Virus record (IMG/VR): IMGVR_UViG_3300042891_000711
Span: 62,001-126,000 of that record
DNA: 64,000 nt
Direction: 5' to 3' (one strand)
Shown: positions 13,058-19,224 of the stretch, piece after piece
Numbering within the stretch: the first letter of the stretch is position 1
Layout of the letters: each line of letters opens with the position of its first letter
Notes under the pieces: generated by a model
The model's input: only the letters and a program-made list of their open reading frames with translations
What the model was told of the DNA's origin: nothing
Databases searched by the model: none
Translations under genes and position numbers: made by a program

Positions 13058-13657
13058 ATGAGTTACAAAAATAAAAAAATAATATTAACGGACTGCGACG
13101 GTGTACTCTTAGACTGGGAGTATGCGTTTCATGTATGGATGCAAGAGCGTGGATATGTATTACACGAAGATGCCAAACTCACATACTACATTCATTTGAT
13201 GTACAATAACCTAGAACACGATGAAAGTAAGAAGTTAGTACGCTTGTTCAATGAAAGTGCGGCTATGGGCTTTGTACCGGCCTTGCGTGACGCTGTATAC
13301 TATGTTAAACGCTTACATGAAGAATATGGCTATGTGTTTCACTGTATCACTAGTATAAGCAAAGATGTTAATGCACAGAAGTTACGTGCAATGAATCTTA
13401 ATAAGTTGTTTGGTGCTAGTGCATTTGAAGAGATTGTTTGTTTAGATACAGGTGCGGATAAAGATGAAGCACTTGAGAAGTATAGAGCCAGTGAATTATA
13501 CTGGATCGAAGACAAACCCGAAAATGCAGACTTGGGTCATGCAATAGGATTAAAATCAATACTATTCGAACATGGGCACAACATGCATCATGAGTGCCCA
13601 TATCCTGTAGTTAAAAATTGGAAAGAAATCTTTGAGTTAATTACCCAATCGGATTAG
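13058..13657 (+). CDS. HAD-family 5'(3')-deoxyribonucleotidase-like phosphatase
   Basis: ILTDCDGVLLDW motif I, WIEDKPEN motif IV. Confidence 0.85.
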   Translation: MSYKNKKIILTDCDGVLLDWEYAFHVWMQERGYVLHEDAKLTYYIHLMYNNLEHDESKKLVRLFNESAAMGFVPALRDAVYYVKRLHEEYGYVFHCITSISKDVNAQKLRAMNLNKLFGASAFEEIVCLDTGADKDEALEKYRASELYWIEDKPENADLGHAIGLKSILFEHGHNMHHECPYPVVKNWKEIFELITQSD

Positions 13658-14420
13658 CTTCGTTCCACTGTTCTTCAGCAATAATAAATTCACGAACAAA
13701 TCCACTACGTACAATATCATCATGATTGAAGTACACACTACGGAATGATGGTATCATTGCTGCAATCTTCACAAATTTAGCAAAGCCACTGATGTCATTC
13801 TTTTTACGATGTAGGTCGTTTTGTGCAATATCACCACAATAGATAAGTTTAGAGTGTTGTCCGACACGTGTTGCTACTGTTGAAAGTTCTTCGTAGTTAG
13901 CATTTTGGAATTCATCAAAGATAACAATACTATTATCCCAGGTTACACCACGAATGTTGCCCGTAGTGTGAAATTCCACAATGCCTGCTTCTTTTAAGAA
14001 TCTATACTGGTTTGTTTTTCTGAATAAATCATTAAACAGTTGTGTATAAGGCAATTCATAAATTGCATTCTTTTCTTCTTGCGTACCTGGTACATATCCC
14101 TGCTCACGAGCTTGAACTGCACTACGTACAATAATTATTTTTTCATATCCATTAACTTTATCTAGTACATCACACAATGAAAGATATAATGCAATAAAAC
14201 TCTTACCCGACCCTGCCGACCCGGCTAATATCATGGAATAGTCATCATTCCACATATCAAAAACTCGTTCTTGGTTTGTTGTTTTGGGACTTACATTTAC
14301 TAAATCATGACTTGAAAATTTCTTTTGGTTGTATGCGGTTGGTATTGGTATTGGGTTGCTGTCTATAAATCTTACGAATTCACGTGCTTTTGTGCTGGTA
14401 CTGCTTCTGCGTTTTGTCAT
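13641..14420 (-). CDS. phoH: PhoH-like ATPase
   Basis: GSAGSGKS, IIIVRS, GYVPG, RGVT, DEFQN, TRVG, GDIAQ, DIVRSG. Confidence 0.93.
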   Translation of the reverse strand: MTKRRSSTSTKAREFVRFIDSNPIPIPTAYNQKKFSSHDLVNVSPKTTNQERVFDMWNDDYSMILAGSAGSGKSFIALYLSLCDVLDKVNGYEKIIIVRSAVQAREQGYVPGTQEEKNAIYELPYTQLFNDLFRKTNQYRFLKEAGIVEFHTTGNIRGVTWDNSIVIFDEFQNANYEELSTVATRVGQHSKLIYCGDIAQNDLHRKKNDISGFAKFVKIAAMIPSFRSVYFNHDDIVRSGFVREFIIAEEQWNEANPIG

Positions 14421-14727
14421 AGTTCACCATTGTTAGTTAATTAGTTATTAATCTTGCGGTGTGGTAAATGTTTCGCCACTGTTAATTAAAGGTTGGTTGT
14501 TAATTGATATGTGTGTTTGAATACAGTAGTGCAGAGTTTAATTGAGACTGTCCGAATATGCCTTCTTGTAGTGTCAGTGTATTAAAACCGTTGTCGTCTG
14601 AGTGTACAATTTATTAAACTTATGCTATTTCTGTATCGCTTTGTCCTCCTATGTTAAATTTATTTAACTATAAGAAACTGACTGAATGTGCTCAGTTATA
14701 TCAGAGATTTAATTACTAAATACTGAG

Positions 14728-15243
14728 CTAAGAGATCCACTCTGCATAAATTCTATTTCCAGTGTCCCACCTTGCAACAGCCATGTTATAACCAAATAGG
14801 TCAGCAAACTCTATATGTTTCTCTATAGTCCATGGATAGAAGTCTATAAATTTACATTCATCATTATTATGATCGGCTAGTCCAGGATTACAACGCCAAT
14901 AGATACGTGATTTAGGTTTAAGCGAATTAACTACTGCACTGATTTGATTTAAAATATTCTCTTCATTACCAAAATTAATACTGCCTAGACAAAATGCTAC
15001 ATCAAATTTGTTTGTGGAAGTAAATTCTTCTATAGATACTTTAACATCAGCGCAGTCGTTGGCAGGGTCAATGCCCAACAGGTTAGGCATACGTGCCCGG
15101 AATTCATTGAATCCGCACCCCACATCCAATACTAATTCATAAGGCTTTATTTTATCTACCAACTCCCACCCAGAATACTTGTATTGTTTTAGGTTGCTAC
15201 GCCACGTGGTACTAAAATAATTATTAAGTGCTGTTTGATTCAT
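14728..15243 (-). CDS. class I SAM-dependent methyltransferase
   Basis: VLDVGCG motif I, FDVAFCLGS. Confidence 0.85.
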   Translation of the reverse strand: MNQTALNNYFSTTWRSNLKQYKYSGWELVDKIKPYELVLDVGCGFNEFRARMPNLLGIDPANDCADVKVSIEEFTSTNKFDVAFCLGSINFGNEENILNQISAVVNSLKPKSRIYWRCNPGLADHNNDECKFIDFYPWTIEKHIEFADLFGYNMAVARWDTGNRIYAEWIS

Positions 15244-15255
15244 ATAATTACTTAT

Positions 15256-15840
15256 ATGAGCAATTTACCTAATCACATATTTTTTACAGGTGTACCCGGT
15301 TCACGGTGGAGTGGCATAGCACAGGTGTTGGAAACTATTCCGGGTATGAATACCAGCGATCGTACACCAGAGCGCAATTATACACATCACACCTATACAG
15401 GACATGTTGGAGCATACTTTGGCCGAGGCATGGAGTTTGATGCTATTCCTATTGCTAGTTATGTAGATCAAGCATGGACAGAATCGGGTGGGTGTAAGCT
15501 AGTTAAGAGTCATGATTGGGCATATAGATTAAATGAGCTACCTAGCTGGACTATGATGGTCTATCGTCCAGATATGTCGAGTTATGCTTGGTGGCACGAA
15601 GCAGGCGGATTTCAAATCAAATATCCCTGTTATGATGCTTATAAGGATAGTGTAGGGATGATGAATGAGATTATGGCACAGAATAAAGCCATATTAGAAT
15701 TTGGTATGATAAATAACTGTAAGTGGGAGTACTTTACATCCGGGTGGATTAAGGCTAACTTCAACGCAGATGTCAAGGTAACTAACGTCTGGCCAGATAT
15801 TCTAGTTACATTGATTAAAAATAACGTTATAGGAAAATAA
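15256..15840 (+). CDS. P-loop/sulfotransferase-like protein
   Basis: IFFTGVPGSRWSG N-terminal loop, LVKSH; start reassigned to ATG 15256. Confidence 0.55.
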   Translation: MSNLPNHIFFTGVPGSRWSGIAQVLETIPGMNTSDRTPERNYTHHTYTGHVGAYFGRGMEFDAIPIASYVDQAWTESGGCKLVKSHDWAYRLNELPSWTMMVYRPDMSSYAWWHEAGGFQIKYPCYDAYKDSVGMMNEIMAQNKAILEFGMINNCKWEYFTSGWIKANFNADVKVTNVWPDILVTLIKNNVIGK

Positions 15841-15841
15841 A

Positions 15842-16531
15842 ATGAACTCAAAACAATTTGTTGCCAAAATGGCACAAGACAATGAAGCACTATTTCAAGC
15901 AAGTGAAATGAACGTTGAAGCATACTTTGCTAGTAACCCTAGCCAAGAAGCACTAGTAGAACACTTTACTGGTCGTATGGTTAACGAACGTATGAACATG
16001 GTTGAAATCTCAACTAAAGTTGCTAATGCACCCGCTGATACATCAGTAGAAACACTAGCATTATTAAGTAAACAAGCATTAGATGAAGCTAATCACTTCC
16101 GTATGGTTAAAGAAGTTATCGAACACATCACAGGCAAAGAAGTTAATGTTGAAGCGGCTATTCAAGCCGAAGAGGCTAAACCAACTGCTAAAGGTGCTGC
16201 GTTATTAGCTAAGTATGAAGCACAAAACGATCCACTGGCACTTGCTGCATACCAATTCATTGCTGAAGGTCGTGCAGAACGGGTATGGGCTAAAATGGCT
16301 GAATGTATCCAAGACGAATTCATCTCAACTACCTACGCTAAGATTGCTAAAGATGAAGGCTTTCACAGCAACATCGGTCGTCGTAGTTTAGAGTTGTTGG
16401 CTACAGATGCTGATACACAAGCACGTATTGAAGAAATTGCGCAGACAATGCGTATGGACTTGTTTGCTATTAGCTGTATGAACACAACAGCAACAGTAGA
16501 AGCTAAAAAATTAATGGGCGTTACTCACTGA
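15842..16531 (+). CDS. ferritin-like diiron protein
   Basis: Two E...DExxH motifs (DEANH, DEGFH), all-helical. Confidence 0.75.
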   Translation: MNSKQFVAKMAQDNEALFQASEMNVEAYFASNPSQEALVEHFTGRMVNERMNMVEISTKVANAPADTSVETLALLSKQALDEANHFRMVKEVIEHITGKEVNVEAAIQAEEAKPTAKGAALLAKYEAQNDPLALAAYQFIAEGRAERVWAKMAECIQDEFISTTYAKIAKDEGFHSNIGRRSLELLATDADTQARIEEIAQTMRMDLFAISCMNTTATVEAKKLMGVTH

Positions 16532-16556
16532 GCATAATTAATTGTATAAGTTTCAG

Positions 16557-16581
16557 AAAAGGGGCTTAGGTCCCTTTTTTT
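16557..16581 (+). terminator. intrinsic terminator
   Basis: AAAAGGGGC-TTAG-GTCCCTTTT plus T-run. Confidence 0.8.
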
Positions 16582-16596
16582 ACCTCTAGGATTTCG

Positions 16597-16827
16597 ATGA
16601 AAGATTACACAAAGATAGTCAAATGGTTTTCAGCAACAATGATTTTATGTGCTATGCCTTTGCATATTTTGGGTATCACCCCTTGGAACAGTATATTACA
16701 AATTATTGGTGCCTGCGGGTGGGTCTATGTAGGTTTCAAATGGAATGAAAAAAGTTTAATCACTAACTTCTTACCGCAGATCTTTATGATCATCGCCGGT
16801 TTAATTTACTTTGCTTATTACAAATGA
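16597..16827 (+). CDS. small 3-TM membrane protein
   Basis: Hydrophobic; AGGA RBS. Confidence 0.7.
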   Translation: MKDYTKIVKWFSATMILCAMPLHILGITPWNSILQIIGACGWVYVGFKWNEKSLITNFLPQIFMIIAGLIYFAYYK

Positions 16828-17360
16828 ATATAATTATCACACAACGCCAAACTACTATTAACAACATAGTATATGATTGCTTAGATCCGAGTTGGTATAG
16901 TTTTCTCGATAATCATAATGTTATACCAATGCCCAATATTATAGAGGTAGATTTTAATGCCGACTTATTAATATTATCGGGCGGAAATGATACTACTGAT
17001 AGACTGGCAACTGAACAAAACTGTTACAACATTGCTGTAGATAAAAATATTCCAATCATTGGCATTTGTCGAGGTGCATTTGTATTAAATCAACTATACA
17101 ACGGTGCTAATAGAGAGTTACCAGGACATCGTAATGTTGATCATACTATAGAAATGGAGGGCAAAACATTTACAGTTAATAGCTATCATGATATGGGTAT
17201 ATACTTAATCGGTGACGACATAGAAGTTATTGCTGAATCCGATGACGGCATTGAAGCATTCAAGCACACATCGCTGCCCCATTGGGGAATTGTATGGCAT
17301 CCTGAGCGCATGAACAATCCCGTATTGCCCGAAGAAATAGCGGATATGCTCAATGGCTAA
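16824..17360 (+). CDS. class I glutamine amidotransferase / peptidase C26-like
   Basis: LILSGGND, GICRG, VNSYH, WHPE catalytic triad motifs. Confidence 0.9.
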   Translation: MNIIITQRQTTINNIVYDCLDPSWYSFLDNHNVIPMPNIIEVDFNADLLILSGGNDTTDRLATEQNCYNIAVDKNIPIIGICRGAFVLNQLYNGANRELPGHRNVDHTIEMEGKTFTVNSYHDMGIYLIGDDIEVIAESDDGIEAFKHTSLPHWGIVWHPERMNNPVLPEEIADMLNG

Positions 17361-17988
17361 GATGCTAATACTAACTGGTCCGCAAGGCGCTGGCAATCAC
17401 CTATGGAGTAAAATATTCAGCCTACATCCAGAAGTATACGGATGGAAAACTCTGCTAGAAAATTATTGGGAAGCTCATCGTTTTGCAGAACCCTTTGCCC
17501 GACACTGGAAGGACCACAGTCTGTTAGCTGCATTTGATTGGACTCAAAGTGACTATTATTTTACTAGTATTAGTTTACCGTTGGGTATTATTGGCAGTGA
17601 TATTAATCCTATATGGATTGCTGATGTACAAGGATTTGCAACTAATGTGTTAGCACAGGGTGTTGAAGTTGAAATAGCTGTAGTCGGCCGCGATCAAACT
17701 ATACTTGCAAATCAACAGACTCGCATTAGAACACAAAGTACCTTGCCACTGTTCTTAGAACAACTACCTAAACTATCAAATCCAACATTTCTAAGTTACG
17801 AATTATTGTATCTGTATAAACAGGATTATTTAAGAAGTTTAAAACTTAATATACCAGTGGCGCACGATAGTCCTAGACTAAGTGAAATACTAGCAGATGA
17901 TGCTAATACAAAATATGTACACAGCATAGACTATAATGAATTAGACAACGGCAACAAATTTGGAACAACATTTAAAACTAAACCATGA
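17353..17988 (+). CDS. P-loop/sulfotransferase-like protein, paralog A
   Basis: LILTGPQGAGNHLWSKIFS. Confidence 0.6.
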   Translation: MAKMLILTGPQGAGNHLWSKIFSLHPEVYGWKTLLENYWEAHRFAEPFARHWKDHSLLAAFDWTQSDYYFTSISLPLGIIGSDINPIWIADVQGFATNVLAQGVEVEIAVVGRDQTILANQQTRIRTQSTLPLFLEQLPKLSNPTFLSYELLYLYKQDYLRSLKLNIPVAHDSPRLSEILADDANTKYVHSIDYNELDNGNKFGTTFKTKP

Positions 17989-18635
17989 AAAAGTTATTAA
18001 TCATTACTGGCCCACAAGGCAGTGGCAATCATTTATTCAGCCGTATTTTAAGCACACACCCTGATGTAGGCGGCTGGAAAAGTTTACTTGAGCAATATTG
18101 GGTACCCAGCGATTTAGAACCTTTTGCTGAATATTGGGTCTATCCCGAACGTCTTACTGAATCACAGTTTACAGGACACGACTATTGGTTAGCTAATGTT
18201 AGCTGCCCATTCTTTTACGATGGTCGGCGCTACATACCTAAGATACTCGAAGTAGCCCAGCAGGCACGAGGCTTTGGTATAGATGTTAAGATTGCTATCA
18301 TAACCCGCGATAAGAATATTAATGCAGAACAACAGTTACGAGTACGTAAGGAAATAACCACTCCAATTGCGCAAGAATACTACTATAATCATCTGTTAAC
18401 CAGCGATTTTCCTATACATTTCCTGTCAAATGAATCATTATTTTTACACCGCGAGCATTACCTTAAATATATTAGTAAACTAGTAAGTTTCCCTATTGAT
18501 TACACTAATCCAGAAATATTTAAATTTATATCCGAAGATCCCAATGCCAAATATGTCAAGCATGTAGATGAATATTGGTTAGATCAGGAAGTGTGGCAAG
18601 GTGTACAATCGAAGCAAGCTCGCGGAATTGAATAA
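17985..18635 (+). CDS. P-loop/sulfotransferase-like protein, paralog B
   Basis: LIITGPQGSGNHLFSRILS; clearly homologous to upstream ORF. Confidence 0.6.
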   Translation: MKKLLIITGPQGSGNHLFSRILSTHPDVGGWKSLLEQYWVPSDLEPFAEYWVYPERLTESQFTGHDYWLANVSCPFFYDGRRYIPKILEVAQQARGFGIDVKIAIITRDKNINAEQQLRVRKEITTPIAQEYYYNHLLTSDFPIHFLSNESLFLHREHYLKYISKLVSFPIDYTNPEIFKFISEDPNAKYVKHVDEYWLDQEVWQGVQSKQARGIE

Positions 18636-18657: not shown

Positions 18658-19224
18658 ATGACCCAAGCAATCACAGACGTTATACAAAATACTAAAGATA
18701 TATTCATGACTGACAGCAGTCTGAATACACTCTTGGACTTTGAACGAGTATTAGACGAACTTGATCTATATGTGTTTAAACATTGGAAAGAGGGTGAACT
18801 GGTGCAAGGACCTGCGTACGAAAAATACTTTGTAACCTGCACATTTATGTGGCCTGCAAAACGTATGCCGGATCCACGTGGTGGCGAGCGGTTACTAAGT
18901 TATGACTGCGAAGTTTACTACAGCAAAGATATGTTAGAATATCCAGTTAAAGTTAAAGAGCCAGATGACTTTGAACCGGGCGGCAAAATGCCTAAGATGA
19001 AAAAAGTTCCAGTCTGGCTAGTTAAAATCGTTATGCCTAAAAAGCTAATGCAAGAAATACAACAAGGTAGTTTGGAATTAGAAAGCGAAACACTGGACCT
19101 TGAGGATGTAAATCAAGCATACGAAGAAGGTGATGACGCAGCAGAAAATATGTCAAGCGAACAACAAGATAATGAGCAAGGCAATGAACAAGGTATCGCA
19201 CAAAATGCACAACAAACAGCTTAA
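18658..19224 (+). CDS. hypothetical late protein
   Basis: TAAATA upstream; LLDFERVLDELD. Confidence 0.75.
   Translation: MTQAITDVIQNTKDIFMTDSSLNTLLDFERVLDELDLYVFKHWKEGELVQGPAYEKYFVTCTFMWPAKRMPDPRGGERLLSYDCEVYYSKDMLEYPVKVKEPDDFEPGGKMPKMKKVPVWLVKIVMPKKLMQEIQQGSLELESETLDLEDVNQAYEEGDDAAENMSSEQQDNEQGNEQGIAQNAQQTA

What the first reader, a model, noticed from the sequence alone, without database searches (positions are those of the whole stretch)
14728..18635. Mini biosynthetic cluster of unknown product
Seen: SAM methyltransferase, three proteins with an N-terminal TGxxGS/A loop (two clear tandem paralogs), ferritin-like diiron protein, small membrane protein and class I glutamine amidotransferase. 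Inference: a pathway that modifies a small molecule, surface glycan or virion protein by sulfo/phospho-transfer, oxidation, methylation and amide chemistry. The sulfotransferase call is tentative.
Basis: inference. Interest (0 to 1): 0.6.

Follow-up and report, generated by a model that had tools for sequence, protein, structure and literature searches.

The report
Phage sulfotransferase-fold tailoring gene cassette
A large uncultured aquatic phage carries a seven-gene cassette (methyltransferase, iron oxygenase, glutamine amidotransferase, small membrane protein, three sulfotransferase-shaped proteins) that is inherited together in related phages and some bacteria and probably decorates a small molecule, though its product is unknown.

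Summary
Window 14728-18635 holds seven intact genes:
- a class I SAM methyltransferase;
- a 194-aa protein with a GxPGS(K/R)WS loop;
- a ferritin-like diiron protein (two ExxH motifs);
- a 76-aa three-helix membrane protein (DUF6552);
- a class I glutamine amidotransferase with an intact Cys-His-Glu triad;
- two tandem paralogs (36% identical) with a GPQG(S/A)GNH loop.

Predicted structures of both loop families resemble sulfotransferases most closely. For the paralogs the top 11 matches are all sulfotransferases (Z 12.5-9.6). The paralogs lack the canonical catalytic Lys/Arg of the donor-binding loop, and neither family matches a Pfam sulfotransferase model.

Among 38 non-redundant related phage loci, the methyltransferase is present in 37, the amidotransferase in 37, the 194-aa protein in 35 and the paralog family in 27, in 31 gene orders.

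In Bdellovibrionales and Tahibacter the diiron homolog heads operons with canonical sulfotransferases. The Bdellovibrionales operons also carry PAPS-synthesis genes, and the Tahibacter operon a sulfatase and a MatE exporter.

The best reading is a mobile sulfation, hydroxylation and methylation cassette acting on a small metabolite with host PAPS. The product, acceptor and donor remain unproven. No described system matches it.

The parts
14728..15243 (-). g1: class I SAM-dependent methyltransferase, short form (171 aa; most distant homologs are about 240 aa with an N-terminal extension)
   Evidence: Motif I VLDVGCG, GIDP and LGSINF are conserved in alignment A4. Pfam/NCBIfam matches are weak. 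Profile hits to solved SAM methyltransferases reach E 0.003. Present in 37 of 38 related loci.
15256..15840 (+). g2: sulfotransferase-fold protein with a G-x-PGS(K/R)WS loop, a KSH motif and an RP(D)D motif (194 aa from the ATG; the ORF list gives TTG 15235)
   Evidence: Alignment A2. AF2 model pLDDT 93.5. VIA-align top four are TPST1, TPST2, olefin-synthase ST and tick TPST, Z 8.8-8.2, against P-loop kinases at Z 7.5 or below. Foldseek is weak (Stf0, E 0.04). The Tahibacter homolog has a weak Sulfotransfer_3 hit, E 0.0037. Present in 35 of 38 loci.
15842..16531 (+). g3: ferritin-like diiron-carboxylate protein, presumed oxygenase
   Evidence: Invariant E49, DEAxH 81-85, EGRAE 142-146 and DEGFH 171-175. 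Atlas feature neighbours are R2-like, AurF, DUF455 and rubrerythrin clusters. The Tahibacter homolog passes Pfam PaaA_PaaC (31.8 bits against 28.5). The family is narrow: 112 representatives in 1.84 billion proteins.
16597..16827 (+). g4: 76-aa membrane protein with three hydrophobic helices (DUF6552), possibly a SemiSWEET-like small transporter unit
   Evidence: DUF6552 E 4e-11, and a weak MtN3_slv hit at E 0.15. Hydropathy shows three segments. Present in 16 of 38 loci.
16824..17360 (+). g5: stand-alone class I glutamine amidotransferase / gamma-glutamyl hydrolase-type protein
   Evidence: Peptidase_C26 and GATase are above Pfam cut-offs. The best NCBIfam match is NF045546, gamma-glutamyl-CDP-amidate hydrolase, at 90 bits; the next family scores 46 bits and the NF045546 cut-off is 250. 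Cys in GICRG and His/Glu in HPE are present. Nearest solved relatives are the PabA domain and GuaA subunit A. Present in 37 of 38 loci.
17353..17988 (+). g6: sulfotransferase-fold paralog (211 aa), loop TGPQGAGNH
   Evidence: 36% identical to g7, E 1e-42. Member of family alignment A1. Predicted to pair with g7.
17985..18635 (+). g7: sulfotransferase-fold paralog (216 aa), loop TGPQGSGNH; its start overlaps the g6 stop by 4 nt
   Evidence: AF2 model pLDDT 95.6. Foldseek top hits are TPST1/2, E 1.5e-6. In VIA-align the top 11 are all sulfotransferases, Z 12.5-9.6, with the first kinase at Z 9.4. 1453 homologs, all unnamed and without Pfam domains.

Best explanation
The region is a real, jointly inherited accessory cassette of an uncultured clade of aquatic T4-like jumbo phages. 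It lies at a variable spot between phoH and a virion-protein gene.

I read it as a tailoring pathway for a low-molecular-weight metabolite, run during infection on host-made donors (PAPS, SAM, glutamine). The proposed roles are:
- The diiron protein g3 hydroxylates or N-oxygenates the substrate.
- The sulfotransferase-fold proteins transfer a sulfuryl group, or a closely related group carried on a 3'-phosphonucleotide donor. These are g2 and a g6/g7 dimer resembling the tyrosylprotein sulfotransferase dimer.
- g1 methylates.
- g5 either supplies amide nitrogen from glutamine or removes a gamma-glutamyl group.
- The three-helix membrane protein g4 moves the substrate or product. Related phages carry TctC, TctA or a sodium-solute symporter that could do the same.

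**Shown here:** gene integrity, motifs, predicted folds, co-inheritance, and the bacterial operon context.

**Inferred:** every catalytic step, the donor, the acceptor and the benefit to the phage.
For: **Co-inheritance.** In 38 non-redundant loci chosen only by g3, with at least 5 kb on both sides, g1 is present in 37, g5 in 37, g2 in 35 and g6/g7 in 27. There are 31 different gene orders (raw table).

**Fold.**
- g7 model: pLDDT 95.6; the top 11 structural matches are all sulfotransferases.
- g2 model: pLDDT 93.5; the same four sulfotransferases rank on top.
- g6+g7 complex: ipSAE 0.89, best of 3 controls 0.04. That mark was reached by 51 of 78 solved complexes and 2 of 108 mismatched pairs. 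The runs share at least 67% of contacts and partner pLDDT is at least 85.

**Bacterial context of g3 homologs.**
- Bdellovibrionales: CysNC and CysD, then g3, a 418-aa Sulfotransfer_3 protein, an ADI/DDAH-like protein and a Sulfotransfer_1/3 protein, followed by a B12-radical SAM enzyme and two methyltransferases.
- Tahibacter: g3, two sulfotransferases, an ADI-like protein, a sulfatase, a g2 homolog and a g1 homolog, then a MatE exporter and a 2H phosphoesterase.
- Massilia and Janthinobacterium: g1, g2, sulfatase, 2H phosphoesterase, a glutamine-cyclotransferase/3'-nucleotidase-like fusion, g3, a cupin and g7.

**Other support.**
- An APS_kinase-family gene lies inside the cassette in 9 of 38 loci. 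In this phage it lies elsewhere in the genome, 46% identical to the in-cassette form.
- Transporters inside related cassettes (TctC, TctA, SSF) and MatE in Tahibacter point to a small molecule.
- Every version has an enzyme acting on the side-chain amide or guanidino nitrogen of Gln or Arg: GATase, ADI-like, or glutamine cyclotransferase.
Against: - No sulfotransferase HMM matches g2, g6 or g7. The profile search against solved chains gives only E 0.4 to TPST1, and nothing for g2.
- In the (non-significant) alignment to canonical bacterial sulfotransferases, g6/g7 have Gly12 where the essential Arg/Lys of the 5'-phosphosulfate loop sits. The 3'-phosphate Ser position is Gln116.
- The margin of g2 over generic P-loop kinases is about 1 Z unit.
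- The phage genomes lack PAPS_reduct-family (CysD/CysH) genes, and the APS-kinase-like gene is absent from 2 of 5 relatives.
- The canonical-sulfotransferase operons belong to g3 homologs only 48-52% identical. Guilt by association is therefore indirect.
- Periplasmic binding proteins and importers in related cassettes could mean assimilation of an imported nutrient rather than biosynthesis.
Confidence: 0.5

Rival explanations
1. The cassette modifies a macromolecule rather than a metabolite. Candidates are tyrosine sulfation and methylation of a virion or host protein, or sulfation and methylation of a host surface glycan to change adsorption or block superinfection.
For: The closest solved folds for both g7 and g2 are protein-tyrosine sulfotransferases, and g6/g7 are predicted to dimerise as those enzymes do. 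The cassette abuts a virion structural gene (phrog_12928). That protein ends in an acidic tail with one Tyr.
Against: No glycosyltransferase turned up among the cassette genes and recurrent accessory families scanned in the phage or bacterial versions. Adjacency to the virion gene reflects backbone position and is not kept in many relatives, where g8 lies upstream of g1. The bacterial operons include a MatE exporter and no phage structural genes. Transporters for small solutes occur inside related cassettes. The olefin-synthase sulfotransferase, which acts on an acyl intermediate rather than a protein, scores as high as the protein enzymes.
Confidence: 0.17
2. The three loop proteins are not sulfotransferases. 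They would be P-loop-derived kinases or nucleotide-binding enzymes using another donor or acceptor, such as phosphorylation of a hydroxylated intermediate or of nucleotides. The cassette would then do phospho-chemistry rather than sulfo-chemistry.
For: The loops are non-canonical for sulfotransferases and lack the Arg/Lys at the expected place. P-loop kinases follow closely in the structure rankings, especially for g2. Phosphoesterases (2H, metallophosphatase, 3'-nucleotidase-like domain, alkaline-phosphatase-superfamily 'sulfatase') surround the bacterial versions.
Against: The loops also lack the Walker A Lys-Ser/Thr: g6/g7 have Asn-His there. For g7, eleven sulfotransferases rank above the first kinase by up to 3 Z units. 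Canonical sulfotransferases and PAPS synthesis genes, not kinases, accompany g3 in bacteria.
Confidence: 0.15
3. The cassette makes an O-methyl-phosphoramidate-like or sulfamate-like group, by analogy with the Campylobacter jejuni MeOPN pathway or the ascamycin/nucleocidin sulfamate genes. An N-substituted glutamine would be cleaved by g5. The activated amidate would be carried on a 3'-phosphonucleotide, transferred by the sulfotransferase-fold proteins and methylated by g1.
For: The best family match of g5 by a wide margin is gamma-glutamyl-CDP-amidate hydrolase (90 bits against 46 for the next). The phage clade has an APS-kinase-family gene, the family of the cytidine diphosphoramidate kinase by my recollection. 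A methyltransferase is nearly always present. In Massilia the g5 slot is taken by a glutamine cyclotransferase fused to a nucleotide-binding domain. The ascamycin cluster combines a sulfotransferase, a sulfatase, an amidinotransferase and PAPS genes (PMC9113183), much like the Tahibacter operon.
Against: g5 scores far below the equivalog cut-off (90 against 250 bits). No PPDK_N-type glutamine kinase and no NTP_transf_3 cytidylyltransferase occur in this phage or in four relatives, two of them complete. The diiron protein has no counterpart in either known pathway. The phage cassette has neither a sulfatase nor an amidinotransferase.
Confidence: 0.1
4. There is no common pathway. The region is simply a hypervariable island where unrelated accessory genes accumulate.
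For: The site is variable: there are 31 gene orders, many inserted accessory genes, and gene-by-gene allele replacement. For example, g5 is 44% identical between relatives whose neighbouring genes are 90-97% identical.
Against: The same four to six families stay together through all rearrangements and also travel together into bacterial chromosomes (Massilia, Janthinobacterium, Tahibacter). That is not expected for unrelated cargo.
Confidence: 0.05

Closest known systems
PAPS-dependent sulfotransferases of the tyrosylprotein sulfotransferase / olefin-synthase (CurM, OLS) type
   Same: The overall fold of g7 (Z 12.5-12.0, rmsd about 3 A over 165-169 residues) and of g2 (Z 8.8-8.2). An N-terminal strand-loop-helix nucleotide loop. 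A conserved Arg-Asp after the fourth strand where the 3'-phosphate motif begins. A predicted dimer for g6/g7.
   Different: The proteins are only about 200 aa. No HMM match. The loop reads GPQG(S/A)GNH or GxPGS(K/R)WS instead of P(K/R)SG(S/T)(S/T). The Ser of the 3'-phosphate motif is replaced. Donor and acceptor are unknown.
Bacterial operons with CysD/CysNC, canonical Sulfotransfer_1/3 enzymes, a DDAH/ADI-like enzyme and methyltransferases around the g3 homolog (Bdellovibrionales MAGs, Tahibacter aquaticus). To my knowledge these are uncharacterised.
   Same: They share the diiron family (48-52% identity). In Tahibacter they also share the g2 and g1 families. All combine a diiron protein, several sulfotransferase-fold proteins, one or more methyltransferases and a Gln/Arg-nitrogen enzyme.
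   Different: The bacterial versions use canonical sulfotransferases, encode PAPS synthesis (Bdellovibrionales), a sulfatase and an exporter (Tahibacter), and have an ADI-like enzyme instead of a GATase. The phage version has none of these.
Campylobacter jejuni O-methyl phosphoramidate (MeOPN) capsule-modification pathway (Cj1415-Cj1420)
   Same: A GATase-type hydrolase whose nearest family is Cj1417. An APS-kinase-family gene in the phage clade. A SAM methyltransferase. Transferases expected to use a 3'-phosphonucleotide donor.
   Different: No glutamine kinase or cytidylyltransferase. g5 is below the equivalog cut-off. The pathway has no diiron enzyme. Pathway details are from my own knowledge, not tested here.
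Sulfamate gene set of ascamycin/nucleocidin clusters (sulfotransferase AcmK, sulfatase AcmG, amidinotransferase AcmN, PAPS genes)
   Same: The same combination of enzyme classes as the Tahibacter operon that carries g1, g2 and g3 homologs (PMC9113183).
   Different: No sequence relation was tested. The phage cassette lacks the sulfatase and the amidinotransferase. The actinomycete clusters have no diiron homolog that I know of.
Auxiliary metabolic gene islands of marine T4-like phages next to phoH
   Same: A variable accessory island in a T4-like replication/structural backbone. Substrate-binding proteins or transporter parts are carried by some members.
   Different: The gene content (three new sulfotransferase-fold families, a new diiron family) was not found in GenBank phages, and four paper searches turned up no description of it.

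Membership tests
PAPS-dependent sulfotransferase superfamily (g6/g7) | Sulfotransferase fold | tested here: met
   AF2 pLDDT 95.6. Foldseek TPST1 E 1.5e-6. In VIA-align the top 11 are all sulfotransferases, Z 12.5-9.6, with the first kinase at 9.4.
PAPS-dependent sulfotransferase superfamily (g6/g7) | 5'-phosphosulfate-binding loop with catalytic Lys/Arg, P(K/R)xG(S/T)(S/T) | tested here: not met
   The invariant loop is GPQG(S/A)GNH. Against canonical bacterial GTERSGSN the Arg position is Gly12. That alignment is not statistically significant.
PAPS-dependent sulfotransferase superfamily (g6/g7) | 3'-phosphate-binding motif R-x7-S | tested here: inconclusive
   R108 is invariant and D109 nearly invariant (at least 90% of sequences), and both are in place. 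The position eight residues on is an invariant Gln116, not Ser.
PAPS-dependent sulfotransferase superfamily (g2, g6, g7) | Match to a curated sulfotransferase HMM | tested here: not met
   No Pfam or NCBIfam hit. PF13469 finds nothing in the phage genome. Only the Tahibacter g2 homolog has a weak Sulfotransfer_3 hit, E 0.0037.
PAPS-dependent sulfotransferase superfamily (g2) | Sulfotransferase fold | tested here: inconclusive
   The top four VIA matches are sulfotransferases, Z 8.8-8.2, but kinases follow at 7.5. Foldseek's best is Stf0 at E 0.04.
PAPS-dependent sulfotransferase superfamily | Use of PAPS as donor | not testable with these tools
   Needs binding or activity assays.
Ferritin-like diiron-carboxylate oxygenases (g3) | Four-helix ligand set E, ExxH, E, ExxH | tested here: met
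   E49, E82/H85, E142 or E146, and E172/H175 are invariant in 31 sequences. They are also kept in distant relatives.
Ferritin-like diiron-carboxylate oxygenases (g3) | Curated family match | tested here: inconclusive
   The window protein has none above cut-off. The Tahibacter homolog passes PaaA_PaaC. Distant relatives hit DUF455, MiaE_2 and AurF weakly.
Class I glutamine amidotransferase (g5) | Pfam GATase/Peptidase_C26 above cut-off and a Cys-His-Glu triad | tested here: met
   51.9 and 45.7 bits. Cys in GICRG and His-x-Glu in HPE are read from the sequence and aligned to a solved PabA domain.
Gamma-glutamyl-CDP-amidate hydrolase, Cj1417 equivalog (g5) | Score above the NCBIfam equivalog cut-off | tested here: not met
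   90.2 bits against a cut-off of 250, although it is the best family by 44 bits.
MeOPN phosphoramidate pathway | Glutamine kinase (PPDK-like) and CTP:phosphoglutamine cytidylyltransferase present | tested here: not met
   No PF01326 or PF12804 match in this phage or four relatives, two of them 100% complete.
Class I SAM methyltransferase (g1) | Motif I GxGxG with acidic beta-2 end; curated HMM | tested here: inconclusive
   VLDVGCG and GIDP are conserved. The Pfam score of 14 bits is below cut-off. The Tahibacter homolog reaches Methyltransf_11 at 26 bits against a cut-off of 21.2.
DUF6552 (g4) | Pfam gathering score | tested here: met
   43.5 bits against 27.

The most novel reading that the evidence does not exclude
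The GPQGxGNH and GxPGS(K/R)WS proteins are new branches of the sulfotransferase fold that have given up the canonical catalytic Lys/Arg. With the diiron enzyme, the amidotransferase and the methyltransferase they would build an unusual N- or O-linked sulfuryl or amidate group (sulfamate-, N-O-sulfate- or methyl-phosphoramidate-like) on a metabolite or nucleotide. A widespread clade of aquatic jumbo phages would make this during infection as an antimetabolite, signal or protective modification. The pathway would have been traded between phages and bacteria.
Probability: 0.15. Interest if true: 0.8.

Novelty: new variant of a known kind. Interest (0 to 1): 0.58.

Why it matters
- Phage-encoded sulfation chemistry is, to my knowledge, barely documented.
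- The cassette defines at least three protein families with no curated model: g2, g6/g7 and g3. The g6/g7 family alone has about 1,450 homologs at 90% clustering.
- It occurs in many freshwater and marine jumbo-phage contigs.
- It has homologs in culturable bacteria (Massilia atriviolacea, Janthinobacterium, Tahibacter aquaticus), so its product can be found by ordinary genetics and metabolomics.
- If the loop proteins are active without the canonical Lys/Arg, they widen what the sulfotransferase fold is known to do.
- If the product is a small sulfated or amidated metabolite, it would be a new kind of phage auxiliary metabolism.

Tried and rejected
- **GenBank phages.** DNA and protein searches gave only a 158-bp, 71% match for the DNA and nothing for g3 or g7.
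- **Profile searches of solved chains.** TPST1 at E 0.4 for g6/g7. Nothing for g2. An irrelevant prenyl synthase at E 0.6 for g3.
- **hhalign of g6/g7 and g2 against canonical bacterial sulfotransferases.** Motif-consistent but not significant.
- **hhalign of accessory families against A1, A2, A5 and A6.** This covered the roughly 300-aa and 228-aa families. Nothing was significant, so I do not claim they are further sulfotransferase-fold paralogs, despite similar N-terminal Gly-rich loops.
- **The 413-aa protein next to the APS-kinase-like gene.** It matches canonical loops only over about 20-34 residues.
- **ESM Atlas fold search for g2.** It returned only its own viral family.
- **Promoter and terminator scan.** No excess over shuffles.
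- **Paper searches.** Searches on DUF6552, phage sulfotransferase AMGs and the MeOPN genes found nothing describing this cassette.
- **Contexts of the most distant g3 relatives.** Uninformative.
- **PDB searches for the cupin and the 228-aa accessory proteins.** Uninformative.
- **MeOPN pathway membership.** Rejected for lack of the kinase and the cytidylyltransferase.
- **First complex-prediction run.** It failed as busy and was repeated unchanged.

Full report
**Where the window lies.** The window is bases 62001-126000 of a 218.9-kb IMG/VR virus record estimated 62% complete. It carries T4-like replication genes (clamp loader, family B DNA polymerase), a Lon-type protease and long tail-fibre genes, and no tRNA. 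GC is about 38% throughout, with no compositional break at the finding.

**Checking the observation.**
- g1 (14728-15243, minus strand) has the class I SAM methyltransferase motifs VLDVGCG, GIDP and LGSINF, conserved across 43 homologs. Curated models only graze it.
- g2 is best started at ATG 15256, giving 194 aa, by alignment with 38 homologs. Its invariant features are G-x-PGS(K/R)WS, KSH, RP(D)D and a WW...YP.Y block.
- g3 (229 aa) has invariant E49, DEAxH, EGRAE and DEGFH, the ligand set of ferritin-like diiron proteins. Language-model neighbours are R2-like, AurF, DUF455 and rubrerythrin clusters.
- g4 (76 aa) is DUF6552 with three hydrophobic segments and a faint MtN3/SWEET resemblance.
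- g5 (178 aa) is a class I amidotransferase with its Cys, His and Glu in place. Its best curated family is the gamma-glutamyl-CDP-amidate hydrolase of Campylobacter, at 90 bits. The next family scores 46 bits and the equivalog cut-off is 250.
- g6 and g7 are tandem paralogs, 36% identical at E 1e-42, and the g7 start overlaps the g6 stop. In 53 family members GPQGxGNH, W31, Y38, E45, W51, SxP, R108, Q116, R119, E150, Y159, NxKY and D200 are invariant, and D109 is nearly so.

**Are the loop proteins sulfotransferases?**
- AlphaFold models built on these alignments are confident: g7 pLDDT 95.6 and g2 pLDDT 93.5.
- For g7, Foldseek puts human and tick tyrosylprotein sulfotransferases first (E 1.5e-6), followed by many cytosolic and carbohydrate sulfotransferases.
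- An exhaustive alignment to 48,161 chains gives eleven sulfotransferases on top: Z 12.5-9.6, about 165-176 aligned residues, rmsd 3.0-4.0 A. The first kinase comes at Z 9.4.
- For g2 the same four proteins lead (TPST1, TPST2, the olefin-synthase sulfotransferase domain and tick TPST; Z 8.8-8.2). P-loop kinases follow at 7.5, and Foldseek alone is weak.
- So the fold call is good for g6/g7 and fair for g2.
- Membership in the enzyme family is not established. No HMM matches. Sequence-profile searches of solved chains give E 0.4 at best.
- When g6/g7 are laid on canonical bacterial sulfotransferases, the position of the catalytic Arg/Lys is Gly12 and the Ser of the 3'-phosphate motif is Gln116. 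Those alignments are motif-consistent but not significant.
- g2 and g6/g7 are not demonstrably homologous to each other beyond the loop.

**g6 and g7 as a pair.**
- A complex prediction scored ipSAE 0.89, with 0.04 as the best of three controls.
- That mark was reached by 51 of 78 solved complexes and 2 of 108 mismatched pairs.
- The three runs share at least 67% of their contacts and partner pLDDT is at least 85.
- The interface is pseudo-symmetric: strands 144-151 of both chains, plus residues 105-119 and 185-195. Many family-invariant residues sit there.
- Tyrosylprotein sulfotransferases are dimers (my knowledge), so the pass may reflect that likeness. It cannot tell a heterodimer from homodimers.

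- g7 found 47 viral loci and g3 found 230, of which 80 were kept.
- I took only g3-selected loci with at least 5 kb on both sides and removed duplicates, leaving 38.
- The core genes are nearly always present: g1 in 37, g5 in 37 and g2 in 35.
- The g6/g7 family is in 27, with copy numbers 0/1/2/3 in 11/14/12/1 loci. g4 is in 16.
- These are arranged in 31 different orders (raw table).
- The genes are therefore kept together through extensive rearrangement, and the finding survives its own test.
- The cassette sits at a variable spot near phoH and a virion-protein gene (phrog_12928). In this phage it lies between them. In many relatives both lie upstream.
- Related cassettes hold extra genes: TctC (9 loci) or TctA (7) of tripartite tricarboxylate transporters, a sodium-solute symporter, a cupin (8), an APS_kinase-family protein (9), a 228-aa family usually next to g2 (21), further methyltransferases, and several unassigned families of about 300 aa.
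- None of these is in the window. The phage has the APS-kinase-like gene about 77 kb downstream of the cassette, outside the window. It is 46% identical to the in-cassette form.

**Bacterial relatives.** A scan of one genome per prokaryote species with the g3 profile found 11 loci.
- Massilia atriviolacea and Janthinobacterium chromosomes carry the following genes: g1 and g2 homologs; a sulfatase-family protein; a 2H phosphoesterase; a glutamine cyclotransferase fused to a domain like the substrate-binding domain of 2',3'-cyclic phosphodiesterase/3'-nucleotidase; g3; the cupin; and a g7 homolog.
- Tahibacter aquaticus has an operon of g3, a Sulfotransfer_1/3 protein, a 429-aa Sulfotransfer_3-like protein, a DDAH/ADI-like protein, a sulfatase, a g2 homolog and a g1 homolog. 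It is followed by a MatE exporter and a 2H phosphoesterase.
- Three Bdellovibrionales MAGs have CysNC and CysD (PAPS synthesis) divergent from g3, a 418-aa Sulfotransfer_3 protein, an ADI-like protein and a Sulfotransfer_1/3 protein. A B12-radical SAM enzyme and two methyltransferases follow.
- A tree of g3 puts all phage copies in one clade with 100/100 support. The Massilia/Janthinobacterium copies and two MAG-bin contigs fall in that clade, with the Massilia/Janthinobacterium pair nested well inside it.
- Tahibacter and Bdellovibrionales fall outside that clade. Long branches to the outgroup make the root uncertain.
- The g3 family is small: 112 representatives at E 0.001 or better among 1.84 billion proteins, about twenty of them full length. 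The most distant ones grade into DUF455, MiaE-like, PaaA/PaaC and AurF families.

**What it most likely does.**
- Every version combines four elements: the diiron protein; two or more sulfotransferase-fold proteins; one or more SAM methyltransferases; and an enzyme that works on the side-chain nitrogen of glutamine or arginine. That last enzyme is a GATase in phages, ADI/DDAH-like in Tahibacter and Bdellovibrionales, and a glutamine cyclotransferase in Massilia.
- PAPS synthesis genes, canonical sulfotransferases, a sulfatase, 3'-nucleotide phosphoesterases, an exporter and solute importers appear around it in one lineage or another.
- The simplest reading is a sulfation-centred tailoring pathway for a small metabolite.
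- The oxygenase would create or adjust the acceptor. The methyltransferase would cap a group. The amidotransferase would deliver nitrogen or remove a gamma-glutamyl group.
- The phage version would depend on host PAPS. No PAPS_reduct-family gene (CysD/CysH) occurs in this phage or in four relatives, two of them complete.
- I give this reading about 0.5.
- The steps are inferred. What is shown is the anatomy, the folds, the co-inheritance and the context.

**Rivals.**
- A macromolecular target (virion protein tyrosines or a surface glycan) fits the tyrosylprotein-sulfotransferase likeness and the neighbouring virion gene. It does not fit the transporters, the exporter, the absence of glycosyltransferases among the genes scanned, or the bacterial chromosomal versions (0.17).
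- The loop proteins may be kinases or use another donor. The non-canonical loops allow it, but they also lack the Walker Lys-Ser/Thr, and sulfotransferases outrank kinases structurally (0.15).
- A methyl-phosphoramidate-like or sulfamate-like product is suggested by three things: the closest family of g5; the APS-kinase-like gene; and the likeness of the Tahibacter gene set to the sulfotransferase/sulfatase/amidinotransferase/PAPS set proposed for ascamycin sulfamate formation (PMC9113183). However, the glutamine kinase and cytidylyltransferase of the Campylobacter pathway are absent, and g5 is far below the equivalog score (0.1).
- A mere island of unrelated genes is contradicted by the co-inheritance (0.05).

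**Novelty.** The cassette and its three unassigned families are absent from GenBank phages, carry no names in the protein collection and were not found in the papers searched. I class it as a new variant of a known kind: a phage accessory tailoring cluster built on the sulfotransferase fold. The value lies in testability, because culturable bacteria carry homologous operons.

**Limits.**
- Only two structure predictions were allowed, so g3, g1, g5 and the accessory families were not folded.
- Sulfotransferase motif positions rest on non-significant alignments and on residue ranges from structure searches, not on inspected coordinates.
- Host identity is unknown.

Noticed in passing
L150 = G000:C1:155517-158774 (outside the window, about 77 kb downstream of the cassette): A dCMP-deaminase-like gene, an APS_kinase-family gene (165 aa; NAD in place of the usual DGD motif as I recall it) and a divergent 413-aa protein. 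The N-terminus of the 413-aa protein, LILTPDRVGSTLL, looks like a canonical sulfotransferase donor loop. Homologs of the 413-aa protein lie beside the cassette in L101-L103.
   Followed up: partly
L003-L006 compared with window 16597-18635: Gene-by-gene mosaicism. In close relatives g4 is 97% and g7 90-91% identical to the window, but g5 is only 44-46% identical. g6 is 58% identical in L005 and L006. Single genes of the cassette are being swapped for divergent alleles.
   Followed up: partly
window 15243-15256: g1 (minus strand) and g2 (plus strand, ATG start) begin 12 nt apart and diverge, so each gene's promoter would lie inside the other gene. The divergent g1/g2 or g1/g3 arrangement is kept in most relatives.
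   Followed up: no
L070:9251-10228, L075:9246-10697, L111:5071-6528: Related phages carry a TctC substrate-binding protein, a TctA membrane subunit or a sodium-solute symporter inside the cassette. In the 38 loci tallied, TctC and TctA never occur in the same locus.
   Followed up: partly
L129 (Massilia atriviolacea chromosome), L131 (Janthinobacterium): Chromosomal copies of g1, g2, g3, the cupin and g7. Their g3 nests inside the phage clade, which suggests transfer between phages and these bacteria. The flanking genes that were checked (AhpF and others) are not phage-like.
   Followed up: partly
L130 (Nitrosopumilaceae MAG contig), L132 (Rhodobacteraceae bin contig): Short contigs in cellular bins carry the phage-type cassette and branch among phage sequences. 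They are probably phage contigs binned with cells.
   Followed up: no
window 18658-19224: The virion protein next to the cassette (phrog_12928) ends in a long acidic, Gln/Asn-rich tail with a single Tyr in ...NQAYEEGDD.... This is the kind of context tyrosylprotein sulfotransferases favour (my knowledge).
   Followed up: no
window 14421-14727: A 300-bp AT-rich non-coding gap lies between phoH and g1, the only sizeable gap in the region. The promoter and terminator scan gave nothing above chance.
   Followed up: partly
window 13058-13657 and 13641-14420: An NT5C/HAD-type 5'-nucleotidase-like gene (phrog_420) and phoH flank the cassette. The HAD gene accompanies it in part of the relatives.
   Followed up: no
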